Made by a program: the position numbers and the translations under genes. The notes beneath the pieces are model-generated. The model was not told the DNA's origin and searched no databases. It saw only the letters and a program-made list of their open reading frames with translations. From Mizuhopecten yessoensis (lineage: Eukaryota): DNA of 64,000 nucleotides. Location of the stretch: assembly GCF_002113885.1 (NCBI RefSeq), contig NW_018404943.1, positions 582,363 through 646,362 on the forward strand. The letters are read 5' to 3'. Below, one piece after another: positions 24,742 to 59,852 of the stretch (within the stretch, counting starts at the first letter, position 1; every line of letters starts with the position of its first letter).

Positions 24742-26235
24742 TTAGTCAGCTTTAATAAGATGGCCAGTAAACGATGGGAAATATGATCCGCGGATATAGT
24801 CGCCAACACTTGACCTATGTCGAACCCAAACGTCACTTCCGACGTTAAGGTGTACGTTTGAAGCACATGCTCCCATAGCATTGTATGTCTGAGATGCACG
24901 CGCACGACAGAGCATACTACCGTCGCGGATTAATTCGATTTCGATAAAGTGTGACTGGTAAGATATGATGGTGACAACGAAGTGGTAGTAGCCAGCCACT
25001 GGAGCCTGGAAACGACCAATGAACGGGTCGTATCCCCCGCCCACCTTCGTGTACACGTTGTCGAAGATGATGACTTCGTTGGCGGCTAGTGGTGTCATGT
25101 CGCTGATGATAGTAGCGGCGAAGGCCACGAATGGATCAGTAGCTCTTGTTTCTAAAAGAAATAAAATTCGTACATTTTATTTTTATTTATTTTTTATGAA
25201 AGTCCTTTAGCTTCTTTTTGAGAGGAGCAACCCAACCATAGCATCCCTTTATTGTTGTATGGTTATACTTTATTTTTTAAACACCGTCTACGTCTACGCA
25301 AGAAAACACAAAAAAGAATTGGTACATGCAGTACCGGTTTTCTCTTGTCATGTTCTGTGAGTTGGACAACGAAACGAGCACACACTTTTGTGGTTTAGAT
25401 TTCTTAAGCTCTGCCGATTGATTACAAAAATATCAAAACGGGTTTTCTTTTCCTTAATGTGATACACACAAATGATACTCATTTGCGCCACATGCAATAT
25501 GAATGATAATGGCATGTGCTTTTATTCGGTTGTATCTTCCAGACATTATATATATTTTACACACTTGGGCATTTGGAATGGTTTATGGTTTACTAAATAA
25601 TCGAAACAAACATATCCCTTGCACTTAGAATTTACATTGAGTGAAATTCATGGGGGGGGGGGTCAAAATATATGAAAATCAACATTAACGTTTTGCCAGT
25701 ATATTACTTATACTTCGTGAAATAACATATCTGTAATAATTCGCGAGTGCAGTGATTCGCGTTTTTTCGCTGCGTTTTTAAACATGATAGATAATGCGAG
25801 ATACGAATATTTAACAGCATCAAATCAAAAACTCTGCGCGTTGATATGGGATATCTAACAGTGTGCACTATGATATTGCCTCATACATAAATGAAAATAA
25901 TAATGTACGAAATCGAATCTGTCTATCAGTAAAACGTGTAGATGATATCAATTAATAAACTGAAACAGAAACAAAAAATACACTCTTAATAAATATCTAC
26001 GTGAAAGCGTTTTAACACTTGATACAGTACCACGGGACTTCGCCATAGCTGCGTTTGACGAGTTGTCTCCCTGCTGACACGCGCATTGCTTCTTGATGTC
26101 GTTCAGCTCAGAAGTGACTTTCTCCAGTTGAGCTTCAAGCTTGCTCAGGCGTTCTTCATTGGAAACTTTACAAAATGCACTAGAAACAGTAACTAGTAAA
26201 ATACAAAAACCAACACACAGACTGTTAGAGGTCAT
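24742..26235 (-). CDS. C1q domain-containing protein A (signal peptide + coiled coil + gC1q), 204 aa; exons 26031-26235 and 24742-25151
   Basis: Exon 1 MTSNSLCVGFCILLVTVSSAFC...AKSR/G, donor GTACTG; acceptor TTTTAG; joins in frame (E) to VAFAA...IIFDNVYTKVGGGYD...GRFQAPVAGYYHF...FTGHLI gC1q domain. Confidence 0.92.
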
Positions 26236-26423
26236 GCTGCCAAAGAGGCTTCAAATCGAGTTCTTAGTAAATGTAAGACGGAGTGCCAATGAGTAAGCCA
26301 GATGACTATAACACCACGGCCTCTTTCTGAAGTAGAGATATGTTACCGAGATAAGGACCAAGTCTGGGCGAAACCAAAGGTCAATGTACATATGTGTTAC
26401 AATTCAATAATACCATCATCAAA
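26236..26423. promoter_or_regulatory. Putative bidirectional promoter between divergent C1qDC genes A and B
   Basis: Start codons only 188 bp apart; contains CCAAT (26286), TATAA (26307), AGATAA (26349), CAAAGGTCA (26375). Confidence 0.6.
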
Positions 26424-27414
26424 ATGGCGTCTCGGACTGCGGTGTGGTGTTTTTTCGGAGTTTTGGCAATTGTAGCCGTTTACTGTATCGAAAACGGGGA
26501 GGACATTATTAGAGGGAGAATACAAAAGTTGGAGACTTTAAACAATAATCTTAAAAAGCAGCTTAGCAATCAAAAGGTTGTTTATAATGATCTCTTAAAC
26601 GAACTGGCAACGTCAACTGATTATAGTGTAAATGACAATCATCATCAAAAGAGGCAGGCACTGAGTAAGTATGCTATTTATTTTTATATATTTTCCTTAA
26701 TCATTTTACGTATTTTATTTGTTTTTATTTATATGTATGGTCTTTTTATTGCTTAAAGTTTCAGTGATTTTTATTTTACCACTCCATTATCCAAACCATT
26801 TAGTATTTCTAATTAGTATTTAGCAAATTAAGCTATTTGTATTATAATCTTTTGGAGATACATTGATTTATTTGATTAGATAACTACTTTGTTTATTTTT
26901 GGAATAATCTTAAAAAAGAATTATTTTTACATCAGCTGTTTATCCTATCAATATCTCAAAAAAAGATATGTTATTAACAAACATGTTTTAAAAAAAGCTA
27001 CATTTTTTGCATTCGGCAGCATGTGAAGGCCCAATTGTGTTCCATGCCAGACTTCAAAACGCCATCTACCCTATCGGAACCAATCAGATCATCGCGTACG
27101 AGGACGTAGTCACCAACGTTGGTAATTCCTACGACTCGTACACGGGTCTCTTCCGAGCACCTGTAGGCGGCGTATACGAGTTCATCGCCACCATGTGGTC
27201 CTCGGACGGCAATTTTCTCGAGTTTGAGATGGTGAGGAATGGTGTGGACATGTGTTACGGCAGGGCCAGCCAGACTAACCAGACCATGGGGACGTGTGTC
27301 AGCATGGTGGAACTCTCCGCGGGAGACAGGGTATGGGTCCGACATCTCAGAGGCAGGGGAACATATGCCAACGGCATGGACTATCCTTCATTCGCTGGTC
27401 ATCTTGTTGTGTAG
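26424..27414 (+). CDS. C1q domain-containing protein B, 211 aa; exons 26424-26664 and 27020-27414
   Basis: AAAATGG start, hydrophobic leader, heptad region, ...HQKRQAL/A GTAAGT; acceptor GGCAG; gC1q IVFHARL...YEDVVTNVGNSYD..TGLFRAPVGGVYEF...FAGHLVV; AATAAA at 27427. Confidence 0.92.
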
Positions 27415-28049
27415 ATATTTTACGTAAATAAAAATATGAATTACAAAATTTAGTTTCCTTTATATATATATATATATATATTTCTTTTAATACGAGATAA
27501 AAGACTGATAACAGTTATATTAAGAAACTTATTCGTGTTTTAAGAAATATTAGGGTTTTATAATCATTTATTCACAAACCAGTGTCCATCCTCACACCAG
27601 CTAAGGTCATAAGAAGATGTGTGCCTAGGGAGATACCGCCAAACGAAAAGCGTAGATAGGAGAAGAAAGTTTATTTGATGTTTAACAATTGCTTCTGAGC
27701 AAAAGCGAAAGAACAAAACTGCCAATTCTGCAAAAAGCTCTTAAGGTAATGCCTGGATTGCTTTGAAATACTTTAATATTGAGAGAACACACTGTTCTGT
27801 CAATAATAAACATACAATATTCATCAGTTCAATATTAAACATTACAATTTGCGGAAATTGTGAAACTGTCTCCCTACATTGGATTTTCAACTAGGGATGT
27901 ACTTCCTATTTCCGTTTATCAATACACTCCAATGACCTTTATTAATTAGTTTAGTCGTCTCTGACGTTAGCGTACAGGTCTTTCATTTCAACGAACATCT
28001 TCCTCGATACTCCTGCGGTTATGCTCACTTTCGCTCTCAGTACACACAT

Positions 28050-29385
28050 TATACAACTTGGTTCGGCTCTTTGTTTAAACCATGTGATACAATTGCCCCG
28101 GATATTTGTTCACATACGTGCTACAAATGGCCCCGGTCTTTGCCCACACACGTGCTACAACTGGTCCAGGTCTTTGTTCACACACGTGATATAACTTGCC
28201 CCGGTCTTTGTTTACACACGGGATACAACTGGCCCCGGTCTTTGCTCACACACGTGATACAACTGGACCAGGTCTTTGTTCACACACGTAATACAGTTTA
28301 CAACTGGCCAAGGTCTTTGTTCACACACGGGATACAACTGGCCCCGGTCTTTATTCACACATGTGACACAACTGGCCCAGTTATTTGGTCACACACGCGA
28401 TACAATTTGCCCAGGTCTTTGTTAACACACTTGATACAACTGGCCCAGGTCTTTGTTCACACACGTGATACAACTGACCCGGATCTTTGTTCACACACGT
28501 GATACAAATGGTGCAGGTCTTTCTTCACATAAGTGATACAACTGGCCCAGATCTGTGTTCACATAAGTGATACAACTGGCCCAGATATTTGTTCACACAC
28601 GTGATACAACTGGTACAGGTCCTGTTCACATAAGTGATACAACTGGCCCAGGTCTTTGTTCACACAAGTGATACAGCTGACCCAGATCTTTTTTTCACAC
28701 ACGTGATACAAATGGTCCAGGTCTTTCTTCACATAAGTGATACAACTGGCCCAGATCTTTGTTCACATACGTGATACAACTGGCCCGGATCTTTGTTCAC
28801 ACACGTGATACAACTAGCCCGGATCTTTGTCTACACACGTGATACAACTGACCCTAATCTTTGTTCACACACGTGATACAACTGACCCGGATCGTTGTTC
28901 ACACACGTGATACAGTTTACAACTGGCCCAGATCTTTGTTAACACACGTGATACAGTTTACAACTGGTCCAGGTCTTGTTCATATAAGTGATACAATTGG
29001 CCAAGGTCTTTGTTCACACACTTGATACAACTGACCCAGGTCTTTGTTCACACACGTGATACAGTTTACAACTGGTTCAGGTCTTGTTCACATAAGTGAT
29101 ACAACTGGCCCAGATATTTGTTCACACACGTGATACAACTGGTACAGGTCCTGTTCACATAAGTGATACAACTGGCCCAGGTCTTTGTTAACACACTTGA
29201 TACAACTGGCCCAGGTCTTTGTTCACACACGTGATACAACTGACCCGGATCTTTGTTCACACACGTGATACAACTGGCCCAGGTTTTTAATCACAACCGT
29301 GATACAACTGACCCAGGTCTTTGTTCACACACGTGCCATAATTACCTTAGATCTTTGTCAACGCATTTGATACAACTGGGCCTGG
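28050..29385. repeat. 34-bp minisatellite (TGATACAACTGGCCCAGGTCTTTGTTCACACACG), ~39 copies
   Basis: 34-nt periodicity with occasional 7-nt (GTTTACA) insertions; ORFs here are repeat artefacts. Confidence 0.95.
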
Positions 29386-31979
29386 GTCGTTTAACACATA
29401 TTACTAAACATGTATGATCCTAATTGTACCTCATCAATGTAGCAACTAAAAAAACCTTAATTAAGCATTGGAAACTATTCATGACTATAGCTGTTTTAAA
29501 TCATTTCTAAAAAAAATATACCTTTTTGGGACTTATATGCAAAAACAGTTCTGAGAGCTAAAACCTCATTGGCACTAGACCAAAATTCAAACCTTGGACT
29601 ATCGCTCTACCCCACTGAGCCACCTACTCATGTGCTACAGTTGTATCCAAATTGAAATTAATGTTTTGTTTTATGATATCCACAAATTTTATTACATGTG
29701 TTAACAAAACCATAATTTGAACTCAAAATCGAGAAGAAATATGAAAAAAGGGGAAGATTTACATGGCGACCGTTGAGAGAGTAAAAGGATAATAAGACTA
29801 GGTGTTCCAGAAGCCGGAGATAAACGCTGCACATGTATATTGTGTATTTTCATTCAAATATTAAAAACCAGGATCATACACTCCTATATATTATACTCAT
29901 GGAATATTTACTTTTTTTTTTTTTTTTTCGTGAAGATTGATTTTTTTTAACAATGGGACTGAAGGTCACCGAATATAAATTCTTATAGCGTTAAGACTTA
30001 AAAGCTTTCTTTAAAGTTTCTTCCAAAAAAAAAAAATACATCACTTAATTTGGTTTTTTTCCGTCACAAATTTTCTATGTACATCTTCAATGAATATCAA
30101 ACAAATAAAAACGATTTAACCACTCCGTTGTAGCATTAAAGAGCTATGTAAAGTTCTGCATTTTTGCATAATTTACAGAAAATGTATTAATTGCAGGTTA
30201 ACAATTCATGTCGATAGAAACCTTTATTTTAAGATTGACAGGGAACACTGAAGATAAGTTCAATACGTAAAACGGTGATCTTACGTCATACAGTAGACGA
30301 CAATATTTTAAAGTTCACCTTTACCTGAAACCGCAAACAGTTACATCCAGTGTACAGGTGTGTTATTTTCAATCAAGAAGGAAATATCATAGTTGGAAAG
30401 GAAATTGTATTAATTCAAATTCTTTTATTTGTACGTAGTTTAGACAACCCCCTTTTCTTTTTTTTAAGAATACATGTTTTACAAATGAATTGTCTGTGTA
30501 ACTATCCATACAAGATTTGTTTATACGAATTAATAATGATAACATAGGAATGATTTGATCTATCTTTTACTGTTATAAACAACTTACAACTTTACCAAAG
30601 ATTAGGATACGTAGGTTCACCTGTTTTCATTGAAATTTCAAACTAATGATCCTTTTTATTTTTAGTTTTTATGATTTTGCCACATTTCAAAGACCCTACA
30701 TCCTTACTCAGTGTCACATAATCTGCTTCAAATCATGAGGATCTCCATCTAACGACTCTGTAAGCTGACAGAATTATAAACAGTCTGTTCTAAAAAAAAA
30801 ACTGTGATCTAAAGCATTGTTACTTAACATTGAATAAAAACTTAACAAATGATTAAATGTTTCATTCGTATATACTTTTTAAAATATGTAATATGGAAAC
30901 AATATATTTAACCGGAAAAGAAATTTGATGAATAAACATTACGTAAATTTTCGACCGGTCAAGATTTCGTATGATTAAGGTTATGAAGCGTGCTTATGTT
31001 TAGAACACATGCAGATATACTTCCTTGTCCAAAATCGGTATAATACAATATTGTGACCCTTTATCTGTTCTGAGTAAGCGTGGGTCGAAACCAGGTGTTT
31101 AGACAACAAGGATAGTGACAGATTGACATCCAGACAACCAATCAGATCATTTAGACCTTCCTTTACACTGGTATCAATAGGCACGAACAAGGAAGGAAAT
31201 CTGACCATCCGTACACAGGTGTTGAATGTACAAAGGTTCGTGTCAACGAGTCAGCTGTTCGGTCGCCTAGAAGTACCTTCACAAGATTTCTGTGAATGGG
31301 GTCAAGGTTTTACGGAGCTCGAAATGATTGAAATGTAATGAAAGTAATCGAAGTAATCGAATGAATGTAGATTTCTTTACGACAAAATAAAATGTCACAA
31401 GGAGGAAATGCCTGAAGATATATAATTCAGGATCCGCAATTTAAGCATATATTTTTTACCACTTTTTTATTTGTAACGTCTCTCTATCTGTTCTTTTCTC
31501 AAATATGAATACTTACAATTTGTATGTTTAAACAATAAGCAACCTTAATGCAAAGCGATATGCTCCTACATTTTGTATAACAGTATAACGCATTACATTT
31601 AAGTGTGAACAGTTTTGTTCGAAACTAGTCAGGGTTAAGTGTATGTACGAGTGGTATACATTCATTAATAAATTACTATTATTAATATTATATTATTGCT
31701 CTCCTATCAACCAAACAAATTTATGCAATGCTATCTATCAATTCTTCGGATTATTATTGATCATATAAAGAATATCTTGTATTAATTGTATTTTATACCT
31801 TGATGGTAATACTATAGAAATACATTTTAATGCAGTGATACCGAAGGAAAAATGTTAACGACATTTAAAGATTCTGATTATACCCAACGTTCACTTATAC
31901 AATGTGCACGGTACAATATCCCAGCATTTAGTTTTATTTTATAAAATCATTCATTTTGTCCCTGCAAGTAGGGCATAAT

Positions 31980-32472
31980 AATTGTACCTGCTGTCCCCAT
32001 TGCATGATCGTAAGAGAGGACTAAATTTGGGATCTTATCTTTTCTCTTCTTTCTAAACAACTTTCTTCTTCCTAATGTCTCCCTTGACAATGCCTCACTT
32101 TTGACCTTTAGTTGAGCGTTCGCCCCTGTGAGGAAGGCTTTGGGTTCTGTCCCCTGGCCGAGACATACAAGAGTATGTAAAAATGGTAGTTAATACTCCT
32201 ACTTAACGCTCAGCAATTTAGGAGTTGCACGACTGGTTCGCCCGTTGTCAGTATAATGTGACCGGGTGGGGTGTCCTGCTGGGTGTCGTCGGCAGTATGT
32301 TTTAGTGAGGTAGCACTATAAAGTTGGCATCGGTTCCGCGCTATCACAAGAAGACAAACACGAAGATATCGCAGCCTCCCAAAACACACGCATGCATTTT
32401 GCACGCATGGGGAGGCCGTCCTTAAATGACCATAGCTTTTGATAGGACGTAAAACAATACTAAACCAAACCA
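31980..32472 (+). mobile_element. SINE with MetaSINE-like central domain (bivalve type)
   Basis: tRNA-like head remnant (AGTTGAGCGTTCGCC...GGGTTCTGTCCCC), central GTCAGTATAATGTGACCGGGTGGGGTG...AGCACTATAAAG, tail CTTAAATGACCATAGC...TAGGACGTAAAAC plus (AAACC)n; tail recurs elsewhere in the window. Confidence 0.65.
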
Positions 32473-33394
32473 AAATGATGTCCTATCGTTGTTTTGAGTC
32501 GTAACCTTGTAGTTGAATAACAATTTTTACAAATAGTCTCCTATATTGACACGGTAGTAATACAAACTGTATTCTACCGGCGAAGTCATAATCTACGCTT
32601 AGATAATGTTACAGTCGTCTTCATGTCCAGACTTATAAGGTATTATTTGAAAAGTTAGTAATCTACATTTATTTTCATTTTTTTAAGTCATTTAAGCCAA
32701 AAAACTTCCGGAATACCTCCTTACATCATGATCACTGTATGTTTGTGTGTGTGTGTGTATTTCTAACGCCTTTCCCTCTCTTTTGATGTCACTTCCGTTT
32801 CGAGTTTCAAAGAAATACGAAAATCATTCCGGTACAAATGATATTGTGCGAAAATTAAAAAATGCTAACAAAAACATTTTCTGCCCATGCATTTCATATA
32901 CAGAAGATTGCTATATGTATTTGGTAGATTAAAAAATGAAGTAACCATGCAGTGCATATAATGTTCGTGTATTTGTGTAAAATGAATGATACATGTACCA
33001 TAAAAATGTTCTGAAGTTTTGTGTGTATGTTGCATATGTTGCCAATTATCCAAAACTCGAAATATATTTATGGGTCATTATAATTAAACCAAAACGCATT
33101 TTATTATATAAAACACAAGAACAGCTTACAGATTTTATTTTATTTTCTGATAGAAATTGATTTTCTAATTTTTTGAACTCATATTGTAGGACTTTCATTC
33201 AAGAAATAATCTGTTAAACATGTTATGACATCTAAATCCTTAGCTTTCTTGTGACTCCGGTGAAACATTTCGGATACAGGTCTATATGAACAAAACTAGG
33301 ATGCATTGTTCAAACCACAAAATGGCATTAACCTTTAAATACTTGATTATCCAAAACAAGTACGTTATACTTTAAGCTTATGGCATGCAGATAT

Positions 33395-33726
33395 CATTCT
33401 CGATACTCCAGTAATCTCGCTCACGTTCTCTGCACCATTGGAATAAATCATGACAAAAGCGAAGCTTCAATGTGTGCTACCATAAGTTGACCCTTTGATT
33501 TACATCAAAATAATCCTGCGACAGTAAAAGGGTTAAATTGAACGGACTTGAAGTCGGGTGTCAGTCCTTTGTAATCATCAAAGGACAGGTAACAGCAAAG
33601 CGAATTGTCATATTTCTTTTACCCGAGACAAATCAAACAGCTAGTATAGTGCCTTCATTTTTGTCATGACGTATTCCAGGGATGCAGAGAGCGCTAGGGA
33701 GCGTAACCCATGGAATATCGAGGTTG
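33395..33726. mobile_element. MITE family 1, second full copy, ~225 bp upstream of C1qDC gene C
   Basis: Homologous to 21648-22002 (shared internal CCTTTGTAATC..CAAAGGACAGGTA); termini CATTCTCG...CGAGGTTG; TSD TGCAGATAT/TCCAGATAT (1 mismatch). Confidence 0.8.
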
Positions 33727-33951: not shown

Positions 33952-35509
33952 ATGTTGAATGTGTTCATATTTGGGTTATGTTTTCTTTCGTTTAATGGGA
34001 TAAATGCGAATGTTTCTGAACGAATTTCCAAGTTGGAAAGCCAGAACACTCGACTTCGGGAGAGACTACACGACCATATCAAGACATACAACGGCCTCCT
34101 CCAGATGTATGTTGACAAAACTTCCCATGTCAATTACGCAGATCCAGACACACGTCAACGCAGGGGTTTGTATTTATTTTCATACAAGTAACTTTCCCTG
34201 CTATACTTCGCAAAAGCGTTTTCATTGCAGAATATTTAAAATAGATTTTATGTCATGTGATGTATGGACACAACAGACCGATCACGTGTGGAGTATAATC
34301 TTATCAAAAACTTAAAACACGACACTATCATTCGACTTACATATGCACGTTTGCCAAAAATAGGTCAGGATATATGAAATCACATATACATGAAATGTAC
34401 AACAAAGATGAACAAAGCTTTAGAGCAAGACTCTATTCTAAACATGTGTCCTAGATGTAACATCGCGATTATTACAAAATCAACATATTGCATGTGTATG
34501 ATTTTGTTTTTAATCTGAAAAATTGGTTCTATCAAATACATCTGACAAATAATTTGAAATCACGTACCATGTACGTAGATAAATTGACAGAGGAAAGATA
34601 CAAAGATTCGTATCAAGATAAAACGATAACAGTATATCTAAAGGATGGTTAAGATAGAAAACTAAACATATAAGCATAATGACTCAAAATTATACAACAC
34701 AACACCATGTCAGAAATATATGTTGATATAACAGTGATACTATTCCGTAATTAAATAAACCTGGCTTCCTGTACAATGAACACATTGTGAGACCAGAAGC
34801 AAAGTTGTAATAATATGTCATGGCATAATAAGAACGCTTAGAAAAAAGTTATAATGGTCTGAGGTACGCTTCTGACTCTTTTCCGTGAACATTGCAATAA
34901 CCCTCTTTACGTTTGTTGATATGTGTTCTTTGTTCTTGCCTAGAAAGATGAAAGAAAGGTTAACATAGGGTAATAGATACCGTATACCAAAACCGAATTA
35001 CACTTTCTACACAGCTGTTTTGTCATTAGAAACTTGTTTAAGCTATACATATATTATGAGTAATATTGAGTAAGAGCTCTAAAAACCCTCTTTACTGTTT
35101 TATAGATTGTCACACCAGGCCCTCACCAATAGCATTTCATGCTCTGATGTCTCAGTCTATATTCCCTTTGGGAGCCAAACAAATCCTACAGTACGATGAC
35201 GTCATCACGAACGTAGGAAATGCATACGACAAATTCACAGGGATATTCCAGGCCCCTATAGGCGGGGTCTACGAGTTTGTAGCTACCATGTGGTCACGTG
35301 AAGGCTACCACATGGACTACGAGATGCTTCACAACGGAATTGACGTATGCTATGGACAAGCTGGAAAAACGAACCAAACAATGGGGGTTTGTGTCAGTGT
35401 TCTGAGCATTGCTTCTGGTGATCGCGTTTGGGTACGAAACCATGCTACAGGGTCGGTTTACGTCAACGGACATGGCTACCCAGCTTTTTCTGGTCATTTG
35501 GTAGCATAA
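33952..35509 (+). CDS. C1q domain-containing protein C, 205 aa; exons 33952-34165 and 35106-35509
   Basis: Leader MLNVFIFGLCFLSFNGINA, coiled coil, ...TRQRR/G donor GTTTGT; acceptor TTTATAG; D-CHTRPSPIAFHA...YDDVITNVGNAYD..TGIFQAPIGGVYEF...FSGHLVA. Confidence 0.92.
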
Positions 35510-38849: not shown

Positions 38850-41488
38850 ATGAAATCGGTTTCAAAGATCATTTGCTACCTCTGTGTAATATTGCCGTGT
38901 GTTTTTAGCAATTTGGCAGATCACCATGATTCATTAGGTAAACTAGAAGATTTGGAGAGTTCGTACGATTCTCTGGAGAAGGAACTCCTAGAGATAGAAG
39001 ATTATATCCAGACTATCAAAGACGCATGTACGGAAGGGTCAATGAAAGGTCACCTTGAAGGTAGAATATATTCCTGTGCGTGTATGTGTTTGGTTTGTGA
39101 ACGTTCGCCTTTAACTTTCTCATGTATATGTATTTAATATATGTTCCATATTGATTGACACTTATCATGTAAACATAATTCCAGTTGGATAATCATTTTT
39201 TTGTTTTAAAGAAAATTATCCTTTTTTTAATACACCCGACAAATAACGGTCTTAAGTAATTAACTATCTTCCTATCACAATATTTACGGCGACGAGTCAA
39301 GTCGGGTAGTATTTGCTGGTGATGATAATTTGCTAATTGATATGCTTAAGTCGCACAGCTATTGTTACATCATTAAACACATATATCGTAATATTCAGAT
39401 CATAGTGGTTTAGCTTTCCTATCACTATAAATAGAAACTAAACCACACTCAGTGTGTAAGTGCAAGGCAATGCATCATAGAGCATCTTCACACAACAATG
39501 ACATCTTAATGTTATAGCTATTTTGGGGCCATCTTTATTGTAGTTGAAAGCCCCACACAAGCTGAAGATACAGTGAAATAGCCCATGGTTATTTATGAAT
39601 GAACTTTGCGCGCAGTGAAAAATAGTTTACATAATCATCGAATGAATGTATGCTTCTTTTCTCAAATTTTGAAGTATGGCCAATATAAGTGTCAGCTGTA
39701 TATCGATAATGGGTGCACTGACAAGATTATCGAAGTTTTTTTGCATATGGAAATCATACTGGAACACCTAGTTGTGACGGCATATATCTATAGGGGGGCT
39801 TCGTAAACTGTAATATTTGATAATCAACTGGTTACATTCTTATCAATGTAACAGAGGTCATTATTTTTTAAATGCCTCCTCTAGGAGTCGAACCCGGGAC
39901 TTTTTTTAATACACACGACAAATATTTGCAAGGCATTTAAGCTCAAATCAAGTGTCAAAAGTAATAAAACATATATGATGGTTTTAATTCCAGTGGCTTA
40001 AAAATGTAATATTCAAGAATGCACTTGAAGGCAGCCGACTTCCATGACATTATTAATGTTAGACATATGTACTTAAGATGTTGAAATAAAATATCAAAAT
40101 CGAAGCTTCGACATCTTTCCTCTCTAAATGACTTATTCACTTGTTAGACCCCATCAACGTGTCTTAATGCATCACAATAACATTAAGTATAAACATATGC
40201 ATGCTAAATGCATCAATTGTGGGACGTATGGTATACCCTTATTGTACTAACCCAATGTCGCCTTAATGCATCACATGTTTAAGTAAACAAATGTCACTAG
40301 ATGTATATAATTCAAATACCAAAATAGGTTTACTATACGTTCCACAATTGATGCATTAAGCATACCCAAGAATATTCGTAATGTTAGTTTGTGCATTAAG
40401 ACACGAAAGATGCTTATCATAGTGTATATGTGATAATGGTGCTGCTTGTCATTGTTAATATACATATCAGCCTGGTTTTTTTCTCATATTTGCTATTTAC
40501 AGAAAAAAGGAACTTCATTCGAACAAGAGGAGACAAGGTGCCTGCTCCATATGCGACAAAACAACGAGAGGAGCGTGTCCCTGCGGGTGTTTCTATAGCC
40601 ATATTGTTTTCACCAACAACAACATTAAGAAAAAGAGCATCGCCAACAACTGGGACCTTTGCTACAACCACGTCTTCAACAACAACTCCTACTACAACTC
40701 CTACTACAACTCCTACTACAACTCCTACTACAACTCCTACAACAACTCTTACTACAACTCCTACAGCAACTCCTACTACAACTCTTACTACAACTCCTAC
40801 AGCAACACCTACTACAACTCTTACAACAACTCCTACTACAACTCCTACTACAACTCCTACTATAACTCCAATTACAACTACAACAACTTTAACCACAACA
40901 CCTACAACAACCCGTACCACAACAACACCGACAACAACTACAACAACCCCTACCACAACAACACCGACAACAACTACAACAACTCCTACCACAACAACAA
41001 CACCGACGACAACTACAACAACTCCTACCACAACAACAACACCGACAACAACAACTTTACCCACTACAACGGAGCGAGTCATACCGCCGGTTGTGTTCCA
41101 GGCGTCTCTTGCAACAGTATATCCAATTATGAGCCCCAAACAGGTGATTGTGTTCGAACGGGTAATCACAAATATCGGTCAAGCCTACGACAGTAACTTT
41201 GGAGTGTTCAAGGTACCGTACAGTGGGCTTTATGAATTCATAGTAACTATTGCAGCTGCTAAAGACCACTTTGTTGATGTGGTGCTGGTAAAGAATGCTG
41301 CCACCCTGTGTAAAGCACATGCGTCCACACCTGACCAGGGTATTGGTATGTGTGTGGCAATTGTACACGCTACCAAAGATGATGATATCATTGTTCGTCA
41401 TCTGAATGGAATCGGGACACATTTGAGTGGACAGAATGGTTATTCGTCCTTCTCAGGGCATTTGATCAGTGCAGATATTGTTAACTAA
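38850..41488 (+). CDS. C1q domain-containing protein D with Thr/Pro mucin-like stalk, 398 aa; exons 38850-39060 and 40503-41488
   Basis: Leader MKSVSKIICYLCVILPCVFS, acidic coiled coil, donor GTAGAA, acceptor TTTACAG, in-frame EKRN...LRKRA-(TPTT)n-gC1q (VVFQASL...FERVITNIGQAYD..FGVFKVPYSGLYEF...FSGHLI); AATAAA at 41494. Confidence 0.88.
40665..41070 (+). repeat. Coding tandem repeat (12-bp ACTCCTACTACA-type then ACA-rich units) encoding the mucin stalk of C1qDC D
   Basis: In-frame repeat within ORF 40430-41488; no stops. Confidence 0.9.
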
Positions 41489-42630
41489 TATGAAATAAAA
41501 TTTGTAACTAAATGAAGAATTATTTGTATCTTGAACAACACAAACGGTTTTGATGCTTGACCTACGGAGCATTGTCATGTCTAGTACACACGTACACTTA
41601 TATAGCATGGGAATATGTTTACATATGCTGAATTAAATGTCCGCGCAGGATAATTAAGTCAAAGAATTTACTAAGAAAATATTGAATTTTTGACGATTAA
41701 AACAATATTTCTTATCTCTTATTGGTTTCCGCTGGGATTCAACACAGTAAAAAGTACTAATTGGTGATTATTTTACCATTGCTCATGTTTAAAGTCTAAT
41801 TATTTATCTTGAGAACTTACTTCTTCAACTTTCGTATATTGAATGGATTGGTTTTGAAATGTTTGCATCTTCCAAACATTTAAGGAAATATATGCTAAAT
41901 CCCCATAAAGGCATTTTTTGGTCAATTTCAGATGATTTATCTGTACCGATACAATAAATCTGTAATATAATAATAAAAACGTGTGTACCTCTACAGACGT
42001 CAACGTGCCCAAAGAAATATTATTTTATCTGATGTTCAAATAAGATTTCTTTTACGAATCAATTCAAGTGTTCAATTATAAAATATATCTCGTTTCGTGC
42101 ATCTAGAAAGTTTGTTGCAAACAAGGAGAATATATAACAATGACCCGTATTTTTTACACATCGATGTAAAATATCGAAGAAATAGATTGTTGTTGCAATC
42201 TTCAGCAAATAGTCAATGGTTTCAATTAATACAATTAACAATAACCCTAGTAAATGTCTGAGTAAATATATGTGAGTTAAAAAATGTCCATGTTTATCTA
42301 TTTGCGATCAATTTTCTACGCTATAATATGTGTTTCCCAATATCTATGTATATACTCTTCTTGTATATTTTGCATCACGCGTTTACGTTAAGAAGATAAT
42401 ACGAGGAAGCCTTGGATTGGGGTGTTCTAATATTTCATGTAAGGAAGAGTGAAGAGTCGGGGACTTGTTTACGATAGACGTGACATACTTTTATATGAAG
42501 GGAATGGTTGGCGCTTACTAACGGGTCTTGCTGTAAACTTATCTCTGTAAGATAGTGACAAGGCCAAGGTCACCAACACAACATACACGAACATTGAACT
42601 AAAATATCTATTCTGATCTAGAATTTCAAA

Positions 42631-45600
42631 ATGGTGGCCGTCACAGTTCTGTTGGGGATCTTTCTTTGTGTCCTAGGTACATGTAAGGGTTCTGTTTCAA
42701 ATAGTGAATTATCTGATAGGTTAGACAGACTTGAAGCTCTGTATGAGAATTTTGAGAGTTTGATAAATGAAAATGGTGTTGAATTACAACAACTGCTCGA
42801 CAAAGCCAGGGCTAAGGCACAACTTGTTAAGGCAATCGACGAAGACCAGGCGGAGCCGGAAGTCGACACCGAAAAACAACCGGAAGATGAGGTCAACAAA
42901 AGACGTAAGATTATTTCATCTTTTTTTTATTATATTAAAGAGCCAAATTTTGATTATGCGTATAGCGTATTTAGGAATCTGTGTAATTTGATGATTTATA
43001 TCAAATTACGCCTGTTGACTTGTTTTATAATAAAGTAATACCCATATTGTGAGTTGATAAATACAATGTTAGAATAGAACAATATAAAATAACAATGGAA
43101 TCTAAGTATATATACTTGTATTGGTTACCGATAGCTCAACACGATGCTACTAGATCGTTTGAGGCGACTAACGTTGGGTCGCTGTAGAAGATTTGATAGT
43201 AAACCTGTGCTTCTGTCCCGTTGTAACACTGGTAATCTGTATTACTGTTATGCTAAGTACTCTTTCCTTTTCTTTTCTGTTGGCGGTGACTAAAATATCT
43301 CTTGATAACCATTCGTCATAATAATTTGATGAGAAGGCCTATATGTAATCGAGGTATTATTGCTAGAAAATCGCACATATAGAATTAAGATAATTAAGCG
43401 TGCAATAGCAAGGATATTATATAATTACAAGTGCTGTCAAGGTGGAAAATGATTTTGTAAGAATTAATGATTTATACTTTTTACATGGATTTCGTATTAA
43501 AAAGTATTCTATACAAGATATATATTAAATCATTGAGCAGGGTTTTTTTTTGCCAGAAATTAAACAAAAACAGTCCCCAAAAGGTACTATTAAAATACAT
43601 CATTATTACTATCCATACTGACAAATCGTGCATGTATCTATATTTGTGCTGATATATATTGCCGATCTTAAATATTTACTGCAAACAAAAAAATCTGTTT
43701 TAATTGATAATATTTCATATAATAAAACCAAAAATACAGAAAAAAAACTATTTTGCAATATATTTGATTGACGTAGAATAATTATAAAGTCTTGATGAAT
43801 AGGATAACGCAAGAGTTATGTATAATTACCCCAACTTATGAATAGCTTACCCTATCAATATAGTAAACATATATACCAAACTTGATATTATTAACGTATA
43901 TTTATGAAAACGATTACTAAAGACTTAAAATGATAATATCTAATGTAGCTTGGAAATAATCCACTAAAAATAGCCGACACATGAAACTGATATTAACAGA
44001 ATCTTTTTGTTTTTACTGATGCATTTTATTATTATAAACTTGCGGAAAATCATTATTTCTTTTGGCAATTTATTTGCGATCAAGAATATGGTAAAACTAG
44101 ACTATTTGACCGCTTTGAAAAGTAATATATTATACTTCCTACCTACTTATTTGGAGAGGGAATATGACCATATGATTTGCTTAATAACAAAATAATTGTT
44201 CTCACTGAACTTCAAAGGTCAGGCTATTGTGGTTATGTTTGCCAAAATAATAAGTAAACGGACAAAAGACATAAACTATCCATATATCTTTCCCAAAGTG
44301 GCATTTTTATTAAGATTTTTAAACACAGAAAATATATTTTAAGCATTTCCTAGTGTTTTTACTTTCTGTCGTGTATAACGCAACAAAACCATATATTTTT
44401 AATTCGAGAATGCTATTTAGTCACATATCTTCTATGTTTTTTCGAAGCAACAATTTCGATACACTTTTCTGGCAAATCATATACTGTACTTTAATTGATC
44501 TTACAATACTGTTAATTCATCCAACTTAATTTTAAATAGCATTTATATATTAAACTTTGGTATTTAAAGCGGTTTGTATTTCATTCTTAATTCCAAAAGA
44601 GGGAGACACAAAATGTTTTCCTCAAGTTTGATTTTAGTAGACCTTTAGCTGTTTTGATATAAAATGTTAATCATTATGATAAAAAAAGCAAAAACAGAAA
44701 ATCATATACATTATACATGTATGCCAACAAATTCAGAGGTTTCAAATGTGTAATAAATTTTGTACACAAATCATTCGGGGGAAAAAATCAACAAAACATT
44801 TGTGTATTTACTCGTCAGAAATGGTATGCAATGTCTGGAAGGGTGCAGAGTATCGTACGTGCATCCTTGTAAAGCACTCTTCCACTAGCTTATTTTTGTT
44901 TGACTGTTAGAAATATAAATGTGTCTCGACAAATCAGATTTCCACGAGAGGTTTTGTAAAAGCCCGACAGTATCGATATCTGCAAATTACTTACATAAAT
45001 AAAAATATTGATTTCAACGCATTGAGTCTTTGAGCTCTGAATATACTTCTTCTCTGCTACATATATATTACGTAAAATTGTATTTTGTTGAAAATTTTTT
45101 TTTAAAAAACGTATCTTTCAGAATCATTATCGTTCGACGTATTTTTCAAGGTCTTTGTATGATATTTTGTTTGAGGTTAGTCAAGAAACAGTTATTGAGC
45201 CAAATCATACGATATATATTGTTTTGAAGCTGTTCAACTTTACCACACATCTGCCATTTCTGTAGGTTGTCGAATGTATTCTTTTCCAAAGAGTTATAAT
45301 AAAGTAATATTTATATTTTATTTGTGTCATATCGTGAAGTGTTATATTTCCCAATAACCGCTGATTTTATAAAGTTTACATCTGTTATAATTTGGTCTCT
45401 TACAGAAATACTGACAACCTTTGCCCCATCCAGTACAACTTCCTCCCGTGCTTCCAACCCTCTGGTGTTTCATGCCACCCTATCAACCTCGTACAGCATC
45501 ATGAGCCCAAAGCAGACGATCGTGTATAACACAGTCATCACAAACGTCGGGAACGCCTACGATTCAAACTTCGGCGTGTTCAAGGCGACCGCGCCTGGTC

Positions 45601-45851
45601 TCTACGAGTTTATAGCAACTGTTTCCGCCTACACCGGTTACTACGTCGATGTTGAAATGGTCCTCAATAACCGGATGTTATGTCGTGCGCATGCCGGAGC
45701 CCCTGACATGGAAATCGGCATGTGTGTTTCCATGGTTCATCTGAATACCGGTGATGACGTATTCGTACGTCATTACAGTGGTAGAGGAACCTACATTTAT
45801 GGTGGCTATAATTATCCGTCGTTTTCTGGACATTTGATAGCAAGAGATTAA
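42631..45851 (+). CDS. C1q domain-containing protein E, 239 aa; exons 42631-42904 and 45406-45851
   Basis: AAAATGG start, leader MVAVTVLLGIFLCVLGTCKG, coiled coil, acidic linker, ...VNKR/C GTAAGA; acceptor CTTACAG; Q-ILTTF...LVFHATL...YNTVITNVGNAYD..FGVFKATAPGLYEF...FSGHLI; AATAAA at 45868. Confidence 0.92.
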
Positions 45852-47330
45852 GTGCATTTTACTCCCAAATAAACAGCTTATAATGTATTCATTTTGTATT
45901 TATTTTATTACAATGTAACATTTTACAAGACATCCAATGCATGAACATTCATGAGTAGCTTTAATGATTACTTTGAAATCCTTGAAAATCTATCTAAAAT
46001 TTTAAATATCTATATACTTCGTGAGTATCATAAAAATAGTAACTGCATTCAACATTTACAAAGATAAATAAAGGGGTAGCTACGTGAAAAGTATAAGGAT
46101 TAAAGTCACAAGCTTTGATTTAGCAAAATAATTTATCCATTTAAATAGCAATAATGACAGTGGCGATACAATTAAAGTAATGTATTCTACAATCTATAAC
46201 CATCCGGAATAAACAAATATAATGTTCCAATCTTCGCTCTTCAGACGTATCAGGCACGATTACAAATATAATTCAAAAACACCAACACACACACATCAAA
46301 TAAACCAGTTACGCTCTAATTTTGTAAGTCGAATTCGAATTGAAGTTTCTATACTTATAGTTTCTTTTTGTGGGTGCGCAATTCATCAATTCTCTTGAAA
46401 ATCAGTTGAAATTCGTAATACGTATTTTTTTTACAGTATACATCTATTAGATAAAGTACAATAGACAGTCAATCTATTAGAAATTCTCGGTATTCTTATC
46501 TCGGTACCTTGAAACACGGGTCTGGGCTAGGTCATCGCTGACTTAATAAGGTGAACTCCTTTTGCAATGTCGAACACTGCTGGTGACCTACAGATGTAAA
46601 ATATCCCAGAGTATAAGAACTGACAAAATCAGTAATGTCACCTGTGGACCAAGGAATGCTCCCTGTTAATAAACAACACGTGTTTTCCACACGAAGGGGT
46701 ATTTTTGAAACGGACCTTTCTTAGATCCTTAACTTTAATTTTATATCACAACTCTTAATCCATCGTTTTTATATATTAATTTTGTAGAACCTTTGGGGAA
46801 GGGTGTGTTGTGTATTGACAAGAGAGTAGAATATATTATATACGAACAAATACGCTAACAAATAAAGGGAGAAGAAACTACAAGGAAGCATGGCTTTTAT
46901 CGTGTTCTTTACCGCCTTCTGCATTTCTGTTATTCTAAGGCTTACCATTCTTTCAAATACATTTATGAATTATTAAACAAACTTATTGAATAATACAAAT
47001 TTACTTTTTGTTCATGACATGAAATGATCTAGTTATGTGATCTATTTTGAGTAAGTTATGTCATACTTAATAATCACTTGACTTGCTCTTCCGTCAGACT
47101 TGAAATGCTGTGCTTTAAACAGGCGTGCGTAGAAGACAGGTGTGTCGCAATCAGTAATGCAAAGGAAATCAAGGTTTAATTTAGCATTATTGGGAAATGC
47201 AATATCATATTGTGACAGTTTTACTAGTCAATAATATCAACTGATCTTTTCTATTCAACTTGTGTGTTCTGGCAAAAAATGGGCAGTTTCAGTACCGTGT
47301 GAACTACCAATTGCTTGTATATACTGATTC

Positions 47331-48213
47331 ATATCCTCGGTGATAACCTGACATTAAACTATATCCTCGGAGATAACCTGACATTTAACTATATCCTCAG
47401 AGACAATCTGACATTTACCTAAATCCTTGGAGATAATCTGACACTTACCTATATCCTCGGAGATAATCTGACATTTAACTATATCCTCGGAGATAATCTG
47501 ACATTTAAATATATCCTCGGAGATAATCTGACATTTAAACATATCCTCGGAGATGACCTGACATTTAAATATATCCTCGGAGATAACCTAACACTTAAAT
47601 ATATCCTCGGAGATGACCTGACATTTAAATATATCCTCGGAGATAACCTAACATTTAAACATATCCTCGGAGATGATCTGACATTTAAATATATCCTCGG
47701 AGATGACCTAACATTTAAATATATCCTCCGAGATGACCTAACATTTAAATATATCCTCCGAGATGATCTGACATTTAACTATATCCTCGGAGATGACCTG
47801 ACATTTAAACATATCCTCGGAGATGACCTAACATTTAAACATATCCTCGGAGATAACCTAACATTTAAATATATCCTCGGAGATAATCTGACATTTAACT
47901 ATATCCTCGGAGATGACCTGACATTTAAATATATCCTCCGAGATGACCTGACATTTAAATATATCCTCGGAGACGACCTGACATTTAAATATATCCTCGG
48001 AGATGATCTGACATTTAAATATATCCTCGGAGATGATCTGACATTTAACTATATCCTCGGAGATGACCTGACATTTAAATATATCCTCGGAAATGACCTA
48101 ACATTTAAATATATCCTCGGAGATGACCTGACATTTAACAATATCCACGGAGATAATCTGACATTTAAATATATCTTCGGAGATAACTTGAAATTTAACT
48201 ATAACCTGGGAGA
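47331..48213. repeat. 30-bp minisatellite (ATATCCTCGGAGATGACCTGACATTTAAAT), ~29 copies
   Basis: Exact 30-nt register visible line after line. Confidence 0.97.
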
Positions 48214-49244
48214 TTTATGTTGTTGCCTACTACTACGTATAAAGGGAGCGACGTGTACTGCCGTGCTGTTTGTATTGAAAGTTATTGGCACTGATGATGA
48301 AGAAAAATATTACGACTTAAGAGAGGTAGTTGAAAACAAAACATAGAGTTATGAATATGTTTAGTTCCTTAATCACAACTCTGAAAGTATTTAGAAGAGT
48401 TTCAAATCTACGAAAGTCGTCATAGTTACTCGTCTATATGGTACTGTGTTTATCTACTTTGTATTGAATTGTAAACATTCATGATCACACAGTATGCATG
48501 AATATGAGAGCAATGGGTACTTCACACGATACTGAAACTGCACAGTTTTTAGCAAAACGCAAAAGTTGAAAATAAAATGTCAGTTGATATAATTGACGTC
48601 GTCGATGTTGAACACGAAAAACCCCACTTTTTACCTCAATTCGGTTAAATTAGGATACTCTTCACTCAGGCCCTTGATCAAATAATTCATTGCAGCTTTT
48701 GATTTTGCTGCGATGTACAAAAATGCAAAGAATCAATTATAATTAGAAATGTTCAAAGAAAGTTTTTAAGAAATTATGTCCACTTTTCATTTCTCCAGAT
48801 TAGGTAAAGATGCTACTACAAACGCTTCGGAATGGTAACCGACAAAGTACAGATATTAAGAGCCGTATCACTATGACTAACCAACCACCTATTAATTAAA
48901 GGCTTTAAGAGAGAGAAAAATATGTAGTCAAAATGAGGCAATTTTTGAGTTTGCTCAACCGTTCTACCTCCTCATAGTTCTGATGGTCTCGGAGCTAACC
49001 TTAATTTAACGCCATATCATGATGGCAAAATCCACCAAGTCTATTTAAAGAGAGTGAATGTATAGCCACCAGGCGACCCTGATTGCACTCTTCCTTTGCA
49101 TCGTCGTACATTAGATGTTTTAATATTATCTAATATTATACTACTAGAGACTCAGAGATCAATAAACAAACAGCCATACTGAAACAATCAATAATCTTTA
49201 CTCAATTGTAAAATTACATAATCATAATTTAATTTAATCAGTTA

Positions 49245-50481
49245 TTATATCAGGTGTCCAGAAAAGGATGCGTATTTTCCACCTGCCAGTGTCTGGTTTG
49301 TGTGAAGATAATGCCGCACGCGCACGTTCTCGTTTTCTTCTAAGGTGACGAATGCGACGCAGAGTCCCATGGACGAGTGTGAAGTACCGGCATGGGTGTT
49401 GCAAATGGTAAAGGGATAGTGTGAGGACCGGACCATCTCGATGTCAGTCGAGTTGCCGTCGGTGGACATGGCGCTGGCCATCAGCTGGTAGTTGCCCTGA
49501 CGAGGGGCTGTGAAGATACCGGTGGAGCTGTTGTAGCCATTCCCTATATTGGTGTGGACCACATCGTATGCAATATCCTCGTTTATGGAGCTGAATACCT
49601 TCTGGGAAGCAAGTCTTGCGTGGAAGGCGATCTGGGACGCCGCGGTGTTACAAGCTGTGTTAAAAAAAAAAACCATATATTTTATGTACGATTATGGCGA
49701 CCTGTATGAAACAATAAATGTCTACATATCTTTGTGGTAATTATTAGTGTAACATTAGTGGCACTTTGGGTTGCCACATACCTTTATTGTATAGTTCCCT
49801 ACCCACATAATATCATAGAACAACGCTAACAATCGTTTACACACAATGAAGCAGTAATTTTTAATTCGATCGCGTAATTGATCCGAATTTTAGATCCATG
49901 TCGCCTTTATTAGTCAAGACCAGACATAACGTTTAACCTCTCACATATGCCGGTAATTTAGAAACAAAATCTCCACGGAGAGAAAAATTATTTCACATTT
50001 TTAATATTCTGATAAGCTTCCTGAGAGAAACTTTATATTATTAAGGAAGTGTTTATACAGGGGATAGCATATGTATGCTACAAACCTTACGAAATATACG
50101 ATACTTTAGTATGCCACGGGAGTAAAACAAAAACATGCAGTTGTCACATTTCGTATCATAATATACATATATACACATAAATAGAAAAGGTATGTAAATG
50201 GATCAACAATAAATCATTTCACACTAACACAATTCTTTACCTAACTGTCTTTTTGTGATTGGTTGATCCGAAGAGGACGAAGGAGCCTCATCTTCGTGTA
50301 GAACGTCCCGGAAGATATCCAGTAGATGCTTGGCCTTTTCTCTGTAGAGTTGGATCTCCGCCTCCAGCTGGACACGTTCGTTCTCGAGTGCTTGCAGTCT
50401 GTTGGCTAGATCTACGTTACTGTCCTCAGCAGCAACATAGCTACCTAACGCACATAATAACAGTACACTGACAACCTTCAT
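49245..50481 (-). CDS. C1q domain-containing protein F, 216 aa; exons 50241-50481 and 49245-49654
   Basis: Leader MKVVSVLLLCALGSYVAA, coiled coil, ...ITKRQL/G donor GTAAAG; acceptor (T)nAACACAG; A-CNTAASQIAFHARL...YDVVHTNIGNGYN..TGIFTAPRQGNYQL...FSGHLI. Confidence 0.92.
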
Positions 50482-59836: not shown

Positions 59837-59852
59837 GGAGGGAAGAAAAGAG

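What the first reader, a model, noticed from the sequence alone, without database searches (positions are those of the whole stretch)
24742..50481. Six-gene C1qDC cluster with prohormone-like architecture: convertase-type site separating coiled coil from gC1q
After splicing, all six proteins have a basic site between the coiled coil and the gC1q domain, at or within a few codons of the same phase-1 intron: A SRETR|A, B HQKR|Q, C RQRR|D, D EEKR|N and LRKR|A, E VNKR|Q, F ITKR|Q. The surrounding linkers are otherwise dissimilar, so retention of KR/RxxR suggests selection. Established: furin/PC enzymes cut after RxK/RR and KR; bivalve C1qDCs often use coiled coils for oligomerisation. Inference: here the coiled coil may be a removable assembly pro-domain (or released peptide) and the mature product a free gC1q trimer, i.e. 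a proteolytically activated lectin/cytokine-like subfamily.
Basis: partly seen in the sequence, partly recalled or inferred. Interest (0 to 1): 0.75.

Follow-up and report, generated by a model that had tools for sequence, protein, structure and literature searches.

The report
Scallop C1q genes with conserved basic site
Six neighbouring scallop immune-lectin (C1q-domain) genes keep a short basic motif in the loose linker before their globular head; it looks like a protease cutting site and is evolutionarily conserved, but cutting is unproven and many other C1q genes of the genome carry the motif too.

Summary
Splicing of A and B is seen in RNA-derived contigs. A, C, E and F equal NCBI proteins. 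D's exon borders are conserved in Pecten.

The motif is more than chance. The P1 Arg is the only linker column at least 90% conserved across 22 scallop and oyster relatives. 15 of 16 scallop proteins have [KR]R or RxxR against 5.7 expected from shuffled linkers. Orthologues swap K and R and change synonymous codons, and oysters share the intron and site. An AlphaFold model puts F's KR in a disordered linker, and the genome has convertase genes.

- Cleavage is untested.
- Only A, C and one unconserved D site fit furin rules; B, E and F have plain KR before an invariant Gln.
- D's two named sites are not kept in all three scallops (LRKR only here, KR|N lost in Pecten); a third, RxxR|V, is kept.
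- 9 of 12 other resolvable C1q genes of this genome also have the motif, many with Val at P1'. This is a family-wide trait, not a special subfamily.
- Nothing is prohormone-like.

It is an ordinary gene family with a modestly interesting, testable hypothesis.

The parts
24742..25151 (-). Gene A exon 2 (gC1q, includes the stop codon)
   Evidence: PF00386 E 1.4e-16. The RNA joint 25151/26031 is present in three runs. Equal to NCBI protein P0009.
26031..26235 (-). Gene A exon 1 (signal peptide, heptad helix 27-47, Cys-x-Cys, ...AKSR)
25144..25146 (-). Gene A P1 Arg (AGA) of R-E-T-R|A. The P4 Arg (CGT) lies at 26032-26034, so the motif spans the intron.
   Evidence: Orthologues have RFRETR, RFRDTR and RIRDTR; it is lost in one Ylistrum paralogue.
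26424..26664 (+). Gene B exon 1. KR is at 26649-26654 (AAG AGG), three codons before the donor.
   Evidence: HQKRQ is kept in Pecten and Ylistrum.
27020..27414 (+). Gene B exon 2 (gC1q)
   Evidence: PF00386 E 1.8e-20. RNA joint seen.
33952..34165 (+). Gene C exon 1. RQRR is at 34153-34164, directly before the donor.
   Evidence: Equal to P0006. Pecten P0005 keeps RQRR.
35106..35509 (+). Gene C exon 2 (gC1q)
   Evidence: PF00386 E 6.2e-19.
38850..39060 (+). Gene D exon 1 (signal peptide, heptad helix 29-56)
   Evidence: The donor is conserved in Pecten.
40503..41488 (+). Gene D exon 2. KR is at 40505-40510, RGD at 40526-40534, REER|V at 40565-40576 and LRKR at 40625-40636. A Thr/Pro repeat spans 40662-41055, followed by gC1q.
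   Evidence: Only RxxR|V is conserved in Pecten and Ylistrum. The splice has not been checked with RNA.
42631..42904 (+). Gene E exon 1. KR is at 42898-42903, directly before the donor.
   Evidence: Equal to P0010. Orthologues have YRRQ and HRRQ with AGA CGA codons.
45406..45851 (+). Gene E exon 2 (19-residue Ser/Thr-rich linker, gC1q)
   Evidence: PF00386 E 1.9e-18.
50241..50481 (-). Gene F exon 1. KR is at 50248-50253, two codons before the donor.
   Evidence: Equal to P0013. The AF2 model puts KR (residues 77-78) in a linker with pLDDT below 50.
49245..49654 (-). Gene F exon 2 (gC1q)
   Evidence: PF00386 E 4.3e-15.

Best explanation
The region is an old, syntenic tandem cluster of six ordinary bivalve 'sC1q-like type II' genes. 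Each encodes a signal peptide, a short heptad coiled coil, a flexible linker and a gC1q head. This much is shown. The linker carries a basic motif ([KR]R, or RxxR in A) that sits mostly 5-10 residues before the first beta strand. It is kept by selection on the protein, not on the DNA, in scallops and oysters. This is also shown. The most likely function is inferred and not shown: the motif is a site of limited proteolysis by subtilisin/kexin-type proprotein convertases in the secretory pathway. C, A and D's LRKR would be furin-type sites, and B, E and F plain KR sites. Cleavage would detach the coiled-coil stalk from the gC1q head. In B, E and F it would leave an N-terminal Gln that could cyclise. 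The oligomeric state and valency would change, as known for vertebrate CTRP12 and Cbln1. The trait is family-wide in scallop C1qDCs rather than the mark of a special subfamily.
For: Conservation of the motif rests on several results. The P1 column is Arg in 20 of 22 sequences and P2 is K or R in 16 of 22. The excess is 15 of 16 against 5.7 expected. In the orthologue alignments, KR (plus Q) is the conserved block inside linkers that are only about 31-38% identical. Codon turnover is seen: AAA AGA / AGA CGA in E, AAA AGA / AAG AGG / AAG AGA in F, CGT / CGA in A. Oyster genes have the same phase-1 intron with EKR, RTRK and REER. The site occurs before or after the intron, and in intronless paralogues. 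On accessibility, the AF2 model of F has a helix at 2-62, a linker at 63-84 with pLDDT below 50, and KR at 77-78. Heptad a/d occupancy is 0.8-1.0 in all six. P1' is Q, E, A, D or S only. At least 5 convertase P-domain loci are in the genome. A precedent exists in the same superfamily: furin cuts CTRP12 at a KKXR motif and changes its oligomer and signalling (PMC12913486).
Against: There are no proteomic, N-terminal or Western data. By the furin rule (from memory: P1 Arg plus two of P2/P4/P6 basic), B, E and F are not furin sites and would need PC1/PC2-like or other enzymes. Many other C1q genes of the genome have [KR]R followed by Val (L002, L008b, L010, L015, L017, C3489 family), and so does D's only conserved site. 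From memory, Val is an unfavourable P1' residue, which hints that the conserved motif may have another role. The native mussel lectin MkC1qDC has 176 residues with a 41-residue sequenced N-terminal part (PMC8706970). So at least one bivalve C1qDC circulates with an N-terminal extension. One Ylistrum paralogue (P0015) and Pecten D lost sites.
Confidence: 0.45

Rival explanations
1. The basic pair is a conserved but uncleaved element at a fixed distance from the gC1q head. It could be a salt-bridge or hinge residue at the stalk-head junction, or a small cationic patch that helps bind anionic ligands (LPS, acidic glycans, glycosaminoglycans).
For: The spacing to the first strand is nearly constant (mostly 5-10 residues) across very different paralogues. 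The frequent [KR]R-Val form in other C1q genes, and in D's only conserved site, is poorly suited to convertases. The native MkC1qDC keeps an N-terminal extension. The bivalve C1qDC papers read do not mention cleavage: zero hits for 'cleav' in PMC6835236, and zero for 'cleavage', 'proteoly', 'propeptide' and 'processing' in PMC10672478.
Against: The AF2 model gives no ordered contact for the site (pLDDT below 50 around it). Two residues are a very small binding patch. In this clade P1 is strictly Arg and almost never Lys, and P1' is always small or polar with an invariant Gln in B, E and F. That is the pattern of a protease site rather than of a charge patch.
Confidence: 0.33
2. The site is cut, but by extracellular trypsin-like serine proteases after secretion rather than by convertases. 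Candidates are proteases of the haemolymph or of microbes, so the site would act as an activation or decoy switch during infection.
For: The site is exposed, a single Arg is the most conserved element, and A's homologous position is monobasic (KSR|E). B, E and F lack the furin P4/P6 basic residues.
Against: P2 is K or R in 16 of 22 sequences, which trypsin-like enzymes do not need. No protease partner was identified here.
Confidence: 0.12
3. There is no function. The motif would be chance, shared ancestry of paralogues, or a by-product of purine-rich splicing signals (AAA AGA) at exon ends.
For: KR is encoded by purine-rich codons next to the splice junction in B, D, E and F. The six genes are paralogues, so they are not independent. 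Basic residues are common in these linkers, and shuffled linkers give about 0.36 hits per protein.
Against: Arg codons switch between the AGR and CGN families, and third positions vary, while the residues stay. The motif lies 0-6 codons before or 1-3 codons after the intron in different genes, and also in intronless genes. It is conserved between scallops and oysters while the surrounding linker is not. Mussel and fish C1q proteins show no such excess.
Confidence: 0.07

Closest known systems
Bivalve sC1q-like type II C1qDC proteins (signal peptide + coiled coil + gC1q; tandemly duplicated two-exon genes), as classified in PMC6835236
   Same: The domain order, two exons, tandem cluster and absence of a collagen tail are the same. 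The six genes are plain members of this class.
   Different: That paper does not mention cleavage or a conserved basic site ('cleav' has 0 occurrences). The conserved [KR]R before gC1q is an added observation.
Vertebrate CTRP12 / adipolin, cut by furin at a KKXR motif to give a globular isoform (PMC12913486)
   Same: It is a secreted C1q/TNF-superfamily protein with a basic site N-terminal to gC1q. Cleavage changes the oligomer and signalling. This is the same logic as proposed here.
   Different: CTRP12 has a collagen stalk and N-terminal Cys domain, not a coiled coil, and it is not an orthologue. Its cleavage is experimentally shown; cleavage here is not.
Cbln1 / cerebellin processing (Bao, Pang & Morgan 2005, J Neurochem; reference seen, content recalled from memory)
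   Same: Cleavage a few residues before the first gC1q strand separates the trimeric head from N-terminal Cys residues that build hexamers. NCBI names several of these scallop proteins 'cerebellin-like'.
   Different: The Cbln1 site is monobasic. In B, C and F the Cys lies after the putative site and would stay with the head. In A the Cys residues lie before it.
TNF-superfamily ligands with furin sites in the stalk (EDA, APRIL, BAFF; from memory)
   Same: They have the same jelly-roll trimer fold family, and a basic site in a flexible stalk releases the soluble trimeric head.
   Different: Those are type II membrane proteins with RXK/RR sites. Here the proteins are already secreted and mostly carry a plain KR.
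Native mussel lectin MkC1qDC (PMC8706970)
   Same: It is a bivalve haemolymph C1qDC, characterised as a protein by Edman sequencing and mass spectrometry.
   Different: The mature form has 176 residues with a 41-residue sequenced N-terminal part, so it is not trimmed to the bare head. Its precursor is unknown.

Membership tests
Bivalve sC1q-like type II C1qDC | C-terminal globular C1q domain | tested here: met
   PF00386 is found in all six second exons, 56-74 bits against a cut-off of 23.7.
Bivalve sC1q-like type II C1qDC | N-terminal signal peptide | tested here: inconclusive
   A hydrophobic core (mean Kyte-Doolittle 3.0-3.2 over 9 residues) lies in the first 25 residues of all six. No SignalP-type predictor was available.
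Bivalve sC1q-like type II C1qDC | Coiled-coil region before gC1q, no collagen Gly-X-Y tail | tested here: met
   Heptad a/d hydrophobic occupancy is 0.8-1.0 over 21-35 residues in all six. The AF2 model of F has a helix at 2-62. No Gly-X-Y repeats are seen in the translations. COILS was not run.
Furin-type proprotein convertase substrates | P1 Arg plus at least two basic residues among P2, P4 and P6 (rule recalled from memory) | tested here: not met
   The rule is met by C (RQRR), A (K-S-R-E-T-R) and D's LRKR. It is not met by B (HHQKR), E (EVNKR), F (PITKR) or D's EEKR.
Furin-type proprotein convertase substrates | P1' not a hydrophobic aliphatic residue | tested here: met
   P1' is Q, E, A, D or S in 22 of 22 clade members. 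The exception is D's conserved RxxR|V, and other C1q genes of the genome have [KR]R|V.
Furin-type proprotein convertase substrates | Site exposed in a secretory protein | tested here: met
   In F, KR lies at residues 77-78 in a linker with pLDDT below 50. Only one protein was modelled.
Furin-type proprotein convertase substrates | Cleavage demonstrated | not testable with these tools
   This needs N-terminal sequencing, Western blots or proteomics.
Prohormone / neuropeptide precursors | Several dibasic-flanked peptides, Gly-KR amidation signals, small bioactive products | tested here: not met
   There is one conserved site per protein and no Gly before KR. The C-terminal product is a 130-residue folded lectin domain.
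CTRP12 / adipolin orthologues | Collagen domain and Cys-rich N-terminal domain before gC1q | tested here: not met
   There is no collagen repeat, and a coiled coil takes its place. The resemblance is functional only.

The most novel reading that the evidence does not exclude
Most scallop and oyster type II C1qDC proteins are made as pro-proteins. A convertase cut about 8 residues before the gC1q head releases head trimers (with pyro-Glu N-termini in the KR-Gln genes) from their coiled-coil stalks. The valency and activity of the greatly expanded bivalve 'proto-complement' lectin repertoire would then be set by proteolysis, and the freed acidic coiled-coil fragments may have a role of their own.
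Probability: 0.25. Interest if true: 0.65.

Novelty: new member of a known kind. Interest (0 to 1): 0.38.

Why it matters
Bivalves have hundreds of C1q-domain genes that serve as soluble pattern-recognition lectins. How their activity and oligomeric state are controlled is largely unknown. A conserved, exposed basic site at the stalk-head junction gives a concrete and cheap hypothesis: proteolytic release of the head, as in vertebrate CTRP12 and Cbln1. It can be tested with existing antibodies, recombinant constructs and public proteomes. If it is wrong, the motif still marks a conserved structural position worth mutating. The gene cluster itself is ordinary and already annotated.

Tried and rejected
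1. An automatic exon-1 finder (signal-peptide score plus splice-site matrices) missed three of the six known genes. I dropped it and read the candidate frames of 20 other C1q loci by hand. Only 12 could be resolved.

I did not try another route, so the background sample is small.

3. The family was clear from Pfam and the word search.

4. Literature searches for C1qDC with furin, dibasic, propeptide or cleavage terms found only vertebrate CTRP12 papers and nothing on bivalves.

5. The prohormone reading was rejected: one site, no amidation signal, and a folded 130-residue product.

6. The splice-enhancer explanation was rejected on codon turnover and variable position relative to the intron.

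7. The 'special subfamily' reading was rejected because unrelated C1q clusters (C3489, C5476, C1463 and others) carry the motif.

8. Earlier notes of the scan held nothing on this topic.

Exons were sent by reference, and database proteins identical to the models (P0006, P0009, P0010, P0013) were used instead. B and D were therefore never searched as full-length proteins.


Full report
**What is there**

The window is G000:C1616:582363-646362 of a 988-Mb, 82,659-contig genome. NCBI proteins named Mizuhopecten yessoensis are identical to four of the gene models, so the animal is the Yesso scallop. The window has no N.

Between 24.7 and 50.5 kb lie six genes, in the order A(-), B(+), C(+), D(+), E(+), F(-). 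Each has two coding exons joined by a GT..AG intron of phase 1.
- Exon 1 encodes a hydrophobic N-terminus and a 21-35-residue stretch with heptad a/d hydrophobic occupancy of 0.8-1.0.
- Exon 2 encodes a gC1q domain (PF00386, E 1e-15 to 2e-20).
- Gene D also has a Thr/Pro-rich mucin-like repeat (40662-41055) between linker and head.

These are the only six C1q exons of this scaffold among the 150 best of at least 224 candidates in the genome. They fit the published class 'sC1q-like type II' (signal peptide, coiled coil, gC1q). That class is the commonest bivalve C1qDC architecture, and its genes are typically tandem duplicates (PMC6835236).

**Check of the observation**

- A: AKSR-E-TRA (so R-E-T-R|A spans the intron)
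- B: HQKR|QAL-T-C
- C: RQRR|-D-C
- D: HLE-E-KR|N, and 45 codons later LRKR|A
- E: VNKR|-Q-IL
- F: ITKR|QL-A-C

Coordinates are verified.

Contigs of three runs from three studies show the joints 26031/25151 (A) and 26664/27020 (B), with depth in the hundreds on exons and about zero in introns. The runs' RNA label is only a guess, inferred from small run size and exon-only coverage. No alternative joint was seen.

NCBI proteins P0009, P0006, P0010 and P0013 equal A, C, E and F. No identical M. yessoensis protein was returned for B, but B is transcribed. For D only a partial call of the head exists. Its donor and acceptor are conserved in Pecten maximus DNA, where a 399-aa gene is called.

Exons went in by reference, and database proteins stood in for the spliced models.

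**Is it more than chance?**

In the 30 residues before gC1q, 15 of 16 scallop proteins of this cluster and its orthologues carry [KR]R or RxxR. Composition-matched shuffles of the same linkers give 5.7.

| Group | Observed | Expected from shuffles |
|---|---|---|
| Scallop cluster and orthologues | 15 of 16 | 5.7 |
| Oyster relatives | 5 of 8 | 2.9 |
| Mussel C1q proteins | 8 of 17 | 6.9 |
| Fish C1q proteins | 16 of 50 | 13.1 |

Mussel and fish proteins found in the same search show no excess.

In a 22-sequence alignment of scallop and oyster relatives, only four of the 133 columns before gC1q are at least 90% conserved. They are the start Met, a Leu-Glu pair in the coiled coil, and the P1 Arg.
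- P1 is R in 20 of 22 sequences, K once and Y once.
- P2 is K or R in 16 of 22.
- P1' is Q (10), E (4), A (4), D (3) or S (1).

Within orthologue groups the linkers are only about 31-38% identical in A, E and F, yet the basic residues persist.
- A: RFRETR, RFRDTR and RIRDTR; lost as KFYETR in one Ylistrum paralogue
- B: HQKRQ in three species
- C: RQRR in two species
- E: NKRQ, YRRQ and HRRQ
- F: TKRQ, RKRQ, TKRQ and KKRQ

**Protein-level or DNA-level constraint?**

Orthologue DNA shows the same phase-1 intron everywhere and codon turnover at the site.
- E: AAA AGA in this genome, AGA CGA in Pecten and Argopecten
- F: AAA AGA, AAG AGG, AAG AGG and AAG AGA
- A: CGT versus CGA

Saccostrea genes have the same intron, with EKR-A|, RTRK| and REER-AAHQ| just before it, using CGA, CGG and AGA codons.

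In other C1q genes of this genome the basic pair lies before the intron, after it, on both sides, or in genes with no intron at all. This speaks against a splice-signal or purine-rich enhancer by-product. It supports a constraint tied to the distance from the head, which is mostly 5-10 residues to the first strand.

**Synteny**

- Pecten maximus has A(-), B(+), an extra C-like/B-like pair annotated as one fused 342-aa model, then C, D, E and F in the same order.
- Argopecten has E(+) F(-).
- Ylistrum has a rhodopsin-type GPCR, then F, E and D. This matches the GPCR gene at 52646-53926(-) of the window.
- In Saccostrea a B/C-like and an A-like gene are neighbours.

The cluster is therefore old.

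**Gene D is the weak case**

- EEKR|N is AELN in Pecten, though DKRN in Ylistrum.
- LRKR|A is absent in both.
- The RGD at 40526-40534 is also not conserved.
- A third motif is kept in all three: REER|V here, RQDR|V in Pecten and RNGR|V in Ylistrum.

**Not a special subfamily**

I read their models by hand. Twelve could be resolved, counting gene families once.

Nine have a basic motif in the same place:

| Locus or family | Motif |
|---|---|
| C3489 family (intronless) | GIKKR\|VS |
| C5476 family | FRR\|V |
| L008a | RRRSRR\|N |
| L008b | RSRR\|V |
| L010 | NRR\|V |
| L011 | RITR\|V |
| L015 | RDRR\|V |
| L017 | PKR\|V |
| L020 | RRRR and PKR\|T |

Three lack it (L003, L013, L014). So the motif is a family-wide trait of scallop C1qDCs.

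Many of these sites have Val at P1'. By the classical rules (recalled from memory, not tested here) Val is unfavourable for furin and prohormone convertases. That keeps a non-proteolytic role in play.

**How it most likely works**

The following is shown:
- The proteins have secretory-type N-termini and heptad helices.
- The linker is disordered. In the AlphaFold model of F (P0013 with a 22-sequence alignment), residues 2-62 are helix, 63-84 are coil with pLDDT below 50, KR is at 77-78 and the head starts at 89.
- The motif is conserved as described above.
- The genome has at least five convertase P-domain loci.

The following is inferred. Convertases cut after the Arg in the secretory pathway and detach the coiled-coil stalk.
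- C, A and D's LRKR fit the furin rule.
- B, E and F have only KR and would need PC1/PC2-like or other enzymes. Their invariant Gln at P1' would give a pyro-Glu N-terminus, a common mark of processed secretory products (my inference).
- In B, C and F a Cys follows the site and would stay with the head. In A the Cys-x-Cys lies before it.

A precedent in the same superfamily is CTRP12, which furin cuts at a KKXR motif into a globular isoform with a different oligomer and signalling (PMC12913486). Cbln1 processing and the furin-released TNF ligands are further analogies from memory.

No paper found here reports such processing for bivalve C1qDCs. The one native bivalve C1qDC with protein sequence, MkC1qDC, has 176 residues including a 41-residue sequenced N-terminal part. 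That neither proves nor excludes processing of its unknown precursor.

**Verdict**

- The cleavage idea is reasonable (about 0.45, plus about 0.12 for other proteases) but untested. An uncleaved structural or binding role is a serious rival (about 0.33).
- 'Prohormone-like' and 'subfamily' are not supported.
- The genes are ordinary, annotated members of a known family. The hypothesis is a modest, testable extension of a mechanism known in vertebrate C1q/TNF proteins.
- Interest is 0.38.

Read laying was given 3,101 letters.

Noticed in passing
window 40662-41055 (gene D exon 2): A Thr/Pro-rich mucin-like tandem repeat (period 12/36) sits between the linker and gC1q. It is conserved in the D orthologues of Pecten maximus (L022:5114-6139) and Ylistrum balloti (L025:15810-16880). 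This is an unusual architecture for a C1qDC. The RGD at 40526-40534 is not conserved.
   Followed up: partly
window 52646-53926 (-): A single-exon rhodopsin-type GPCR (7tm_1, Srw-like) lies next to gene F. A similar GPCR sits next to the F orthologue in Ylistrum balloti (L025:5705-7000), so the neighbourhood is syntenic.
   Followed up: partly
L001, L004, L005, L006 (G000:C3489:418-450 kb): A cluster of intronless C1qDC genes has long coiled coils built of RIADLEK-like repeats and a conserved GIKKR|VS 8 residues before gC1q. They could be retrocopy-derived or an independent architecture.
   Followed up: partly
L021:14429-20946 (Pecten maximus): The annotated 342-aa protein P0008 joins a C-like and a B-like gC1q domain. 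It is probably two tandem genes merged by the annotation, that is, an extra C/B pair absent from the scallop window.
   Followed up: no
G000:C1616:1024063-1024281 (-): The best proprotein-convertase P-domain match of the genome lies on the same scaffold, about 378 kb beyond the window. This is probably coincidence.
   Followed up: no
window 28042-29335 and 47331-48214: Two large minisatellites lie between the C1q genes (34 bp x 37 copies, 30 bp x 29.5 copies). They create spurious repetitive ORFs.
   Followed up: no
window 56600-62400 (-): A GC-rich (0.50-0.58) retroelement has a reverse transcriptase (RVT_1) and long overlapping ORFs.
   Followed up: no
window 15098-15484 and 18689-19075 (-): Two near-identical 128-aa ORFs lie 3.6 kb apart, with no Pfam hit. 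They are likely tails of a repeated mobile element.
   Followed up: no
window 26424-27414 (gene B): No M. yessoensis protein identical to gene B came back from the protein searches, although the spliced form stands at high depth in the contigs of three (putatively RNA) runs. The gene may be missing from the public annotation.
   Followed up: partly
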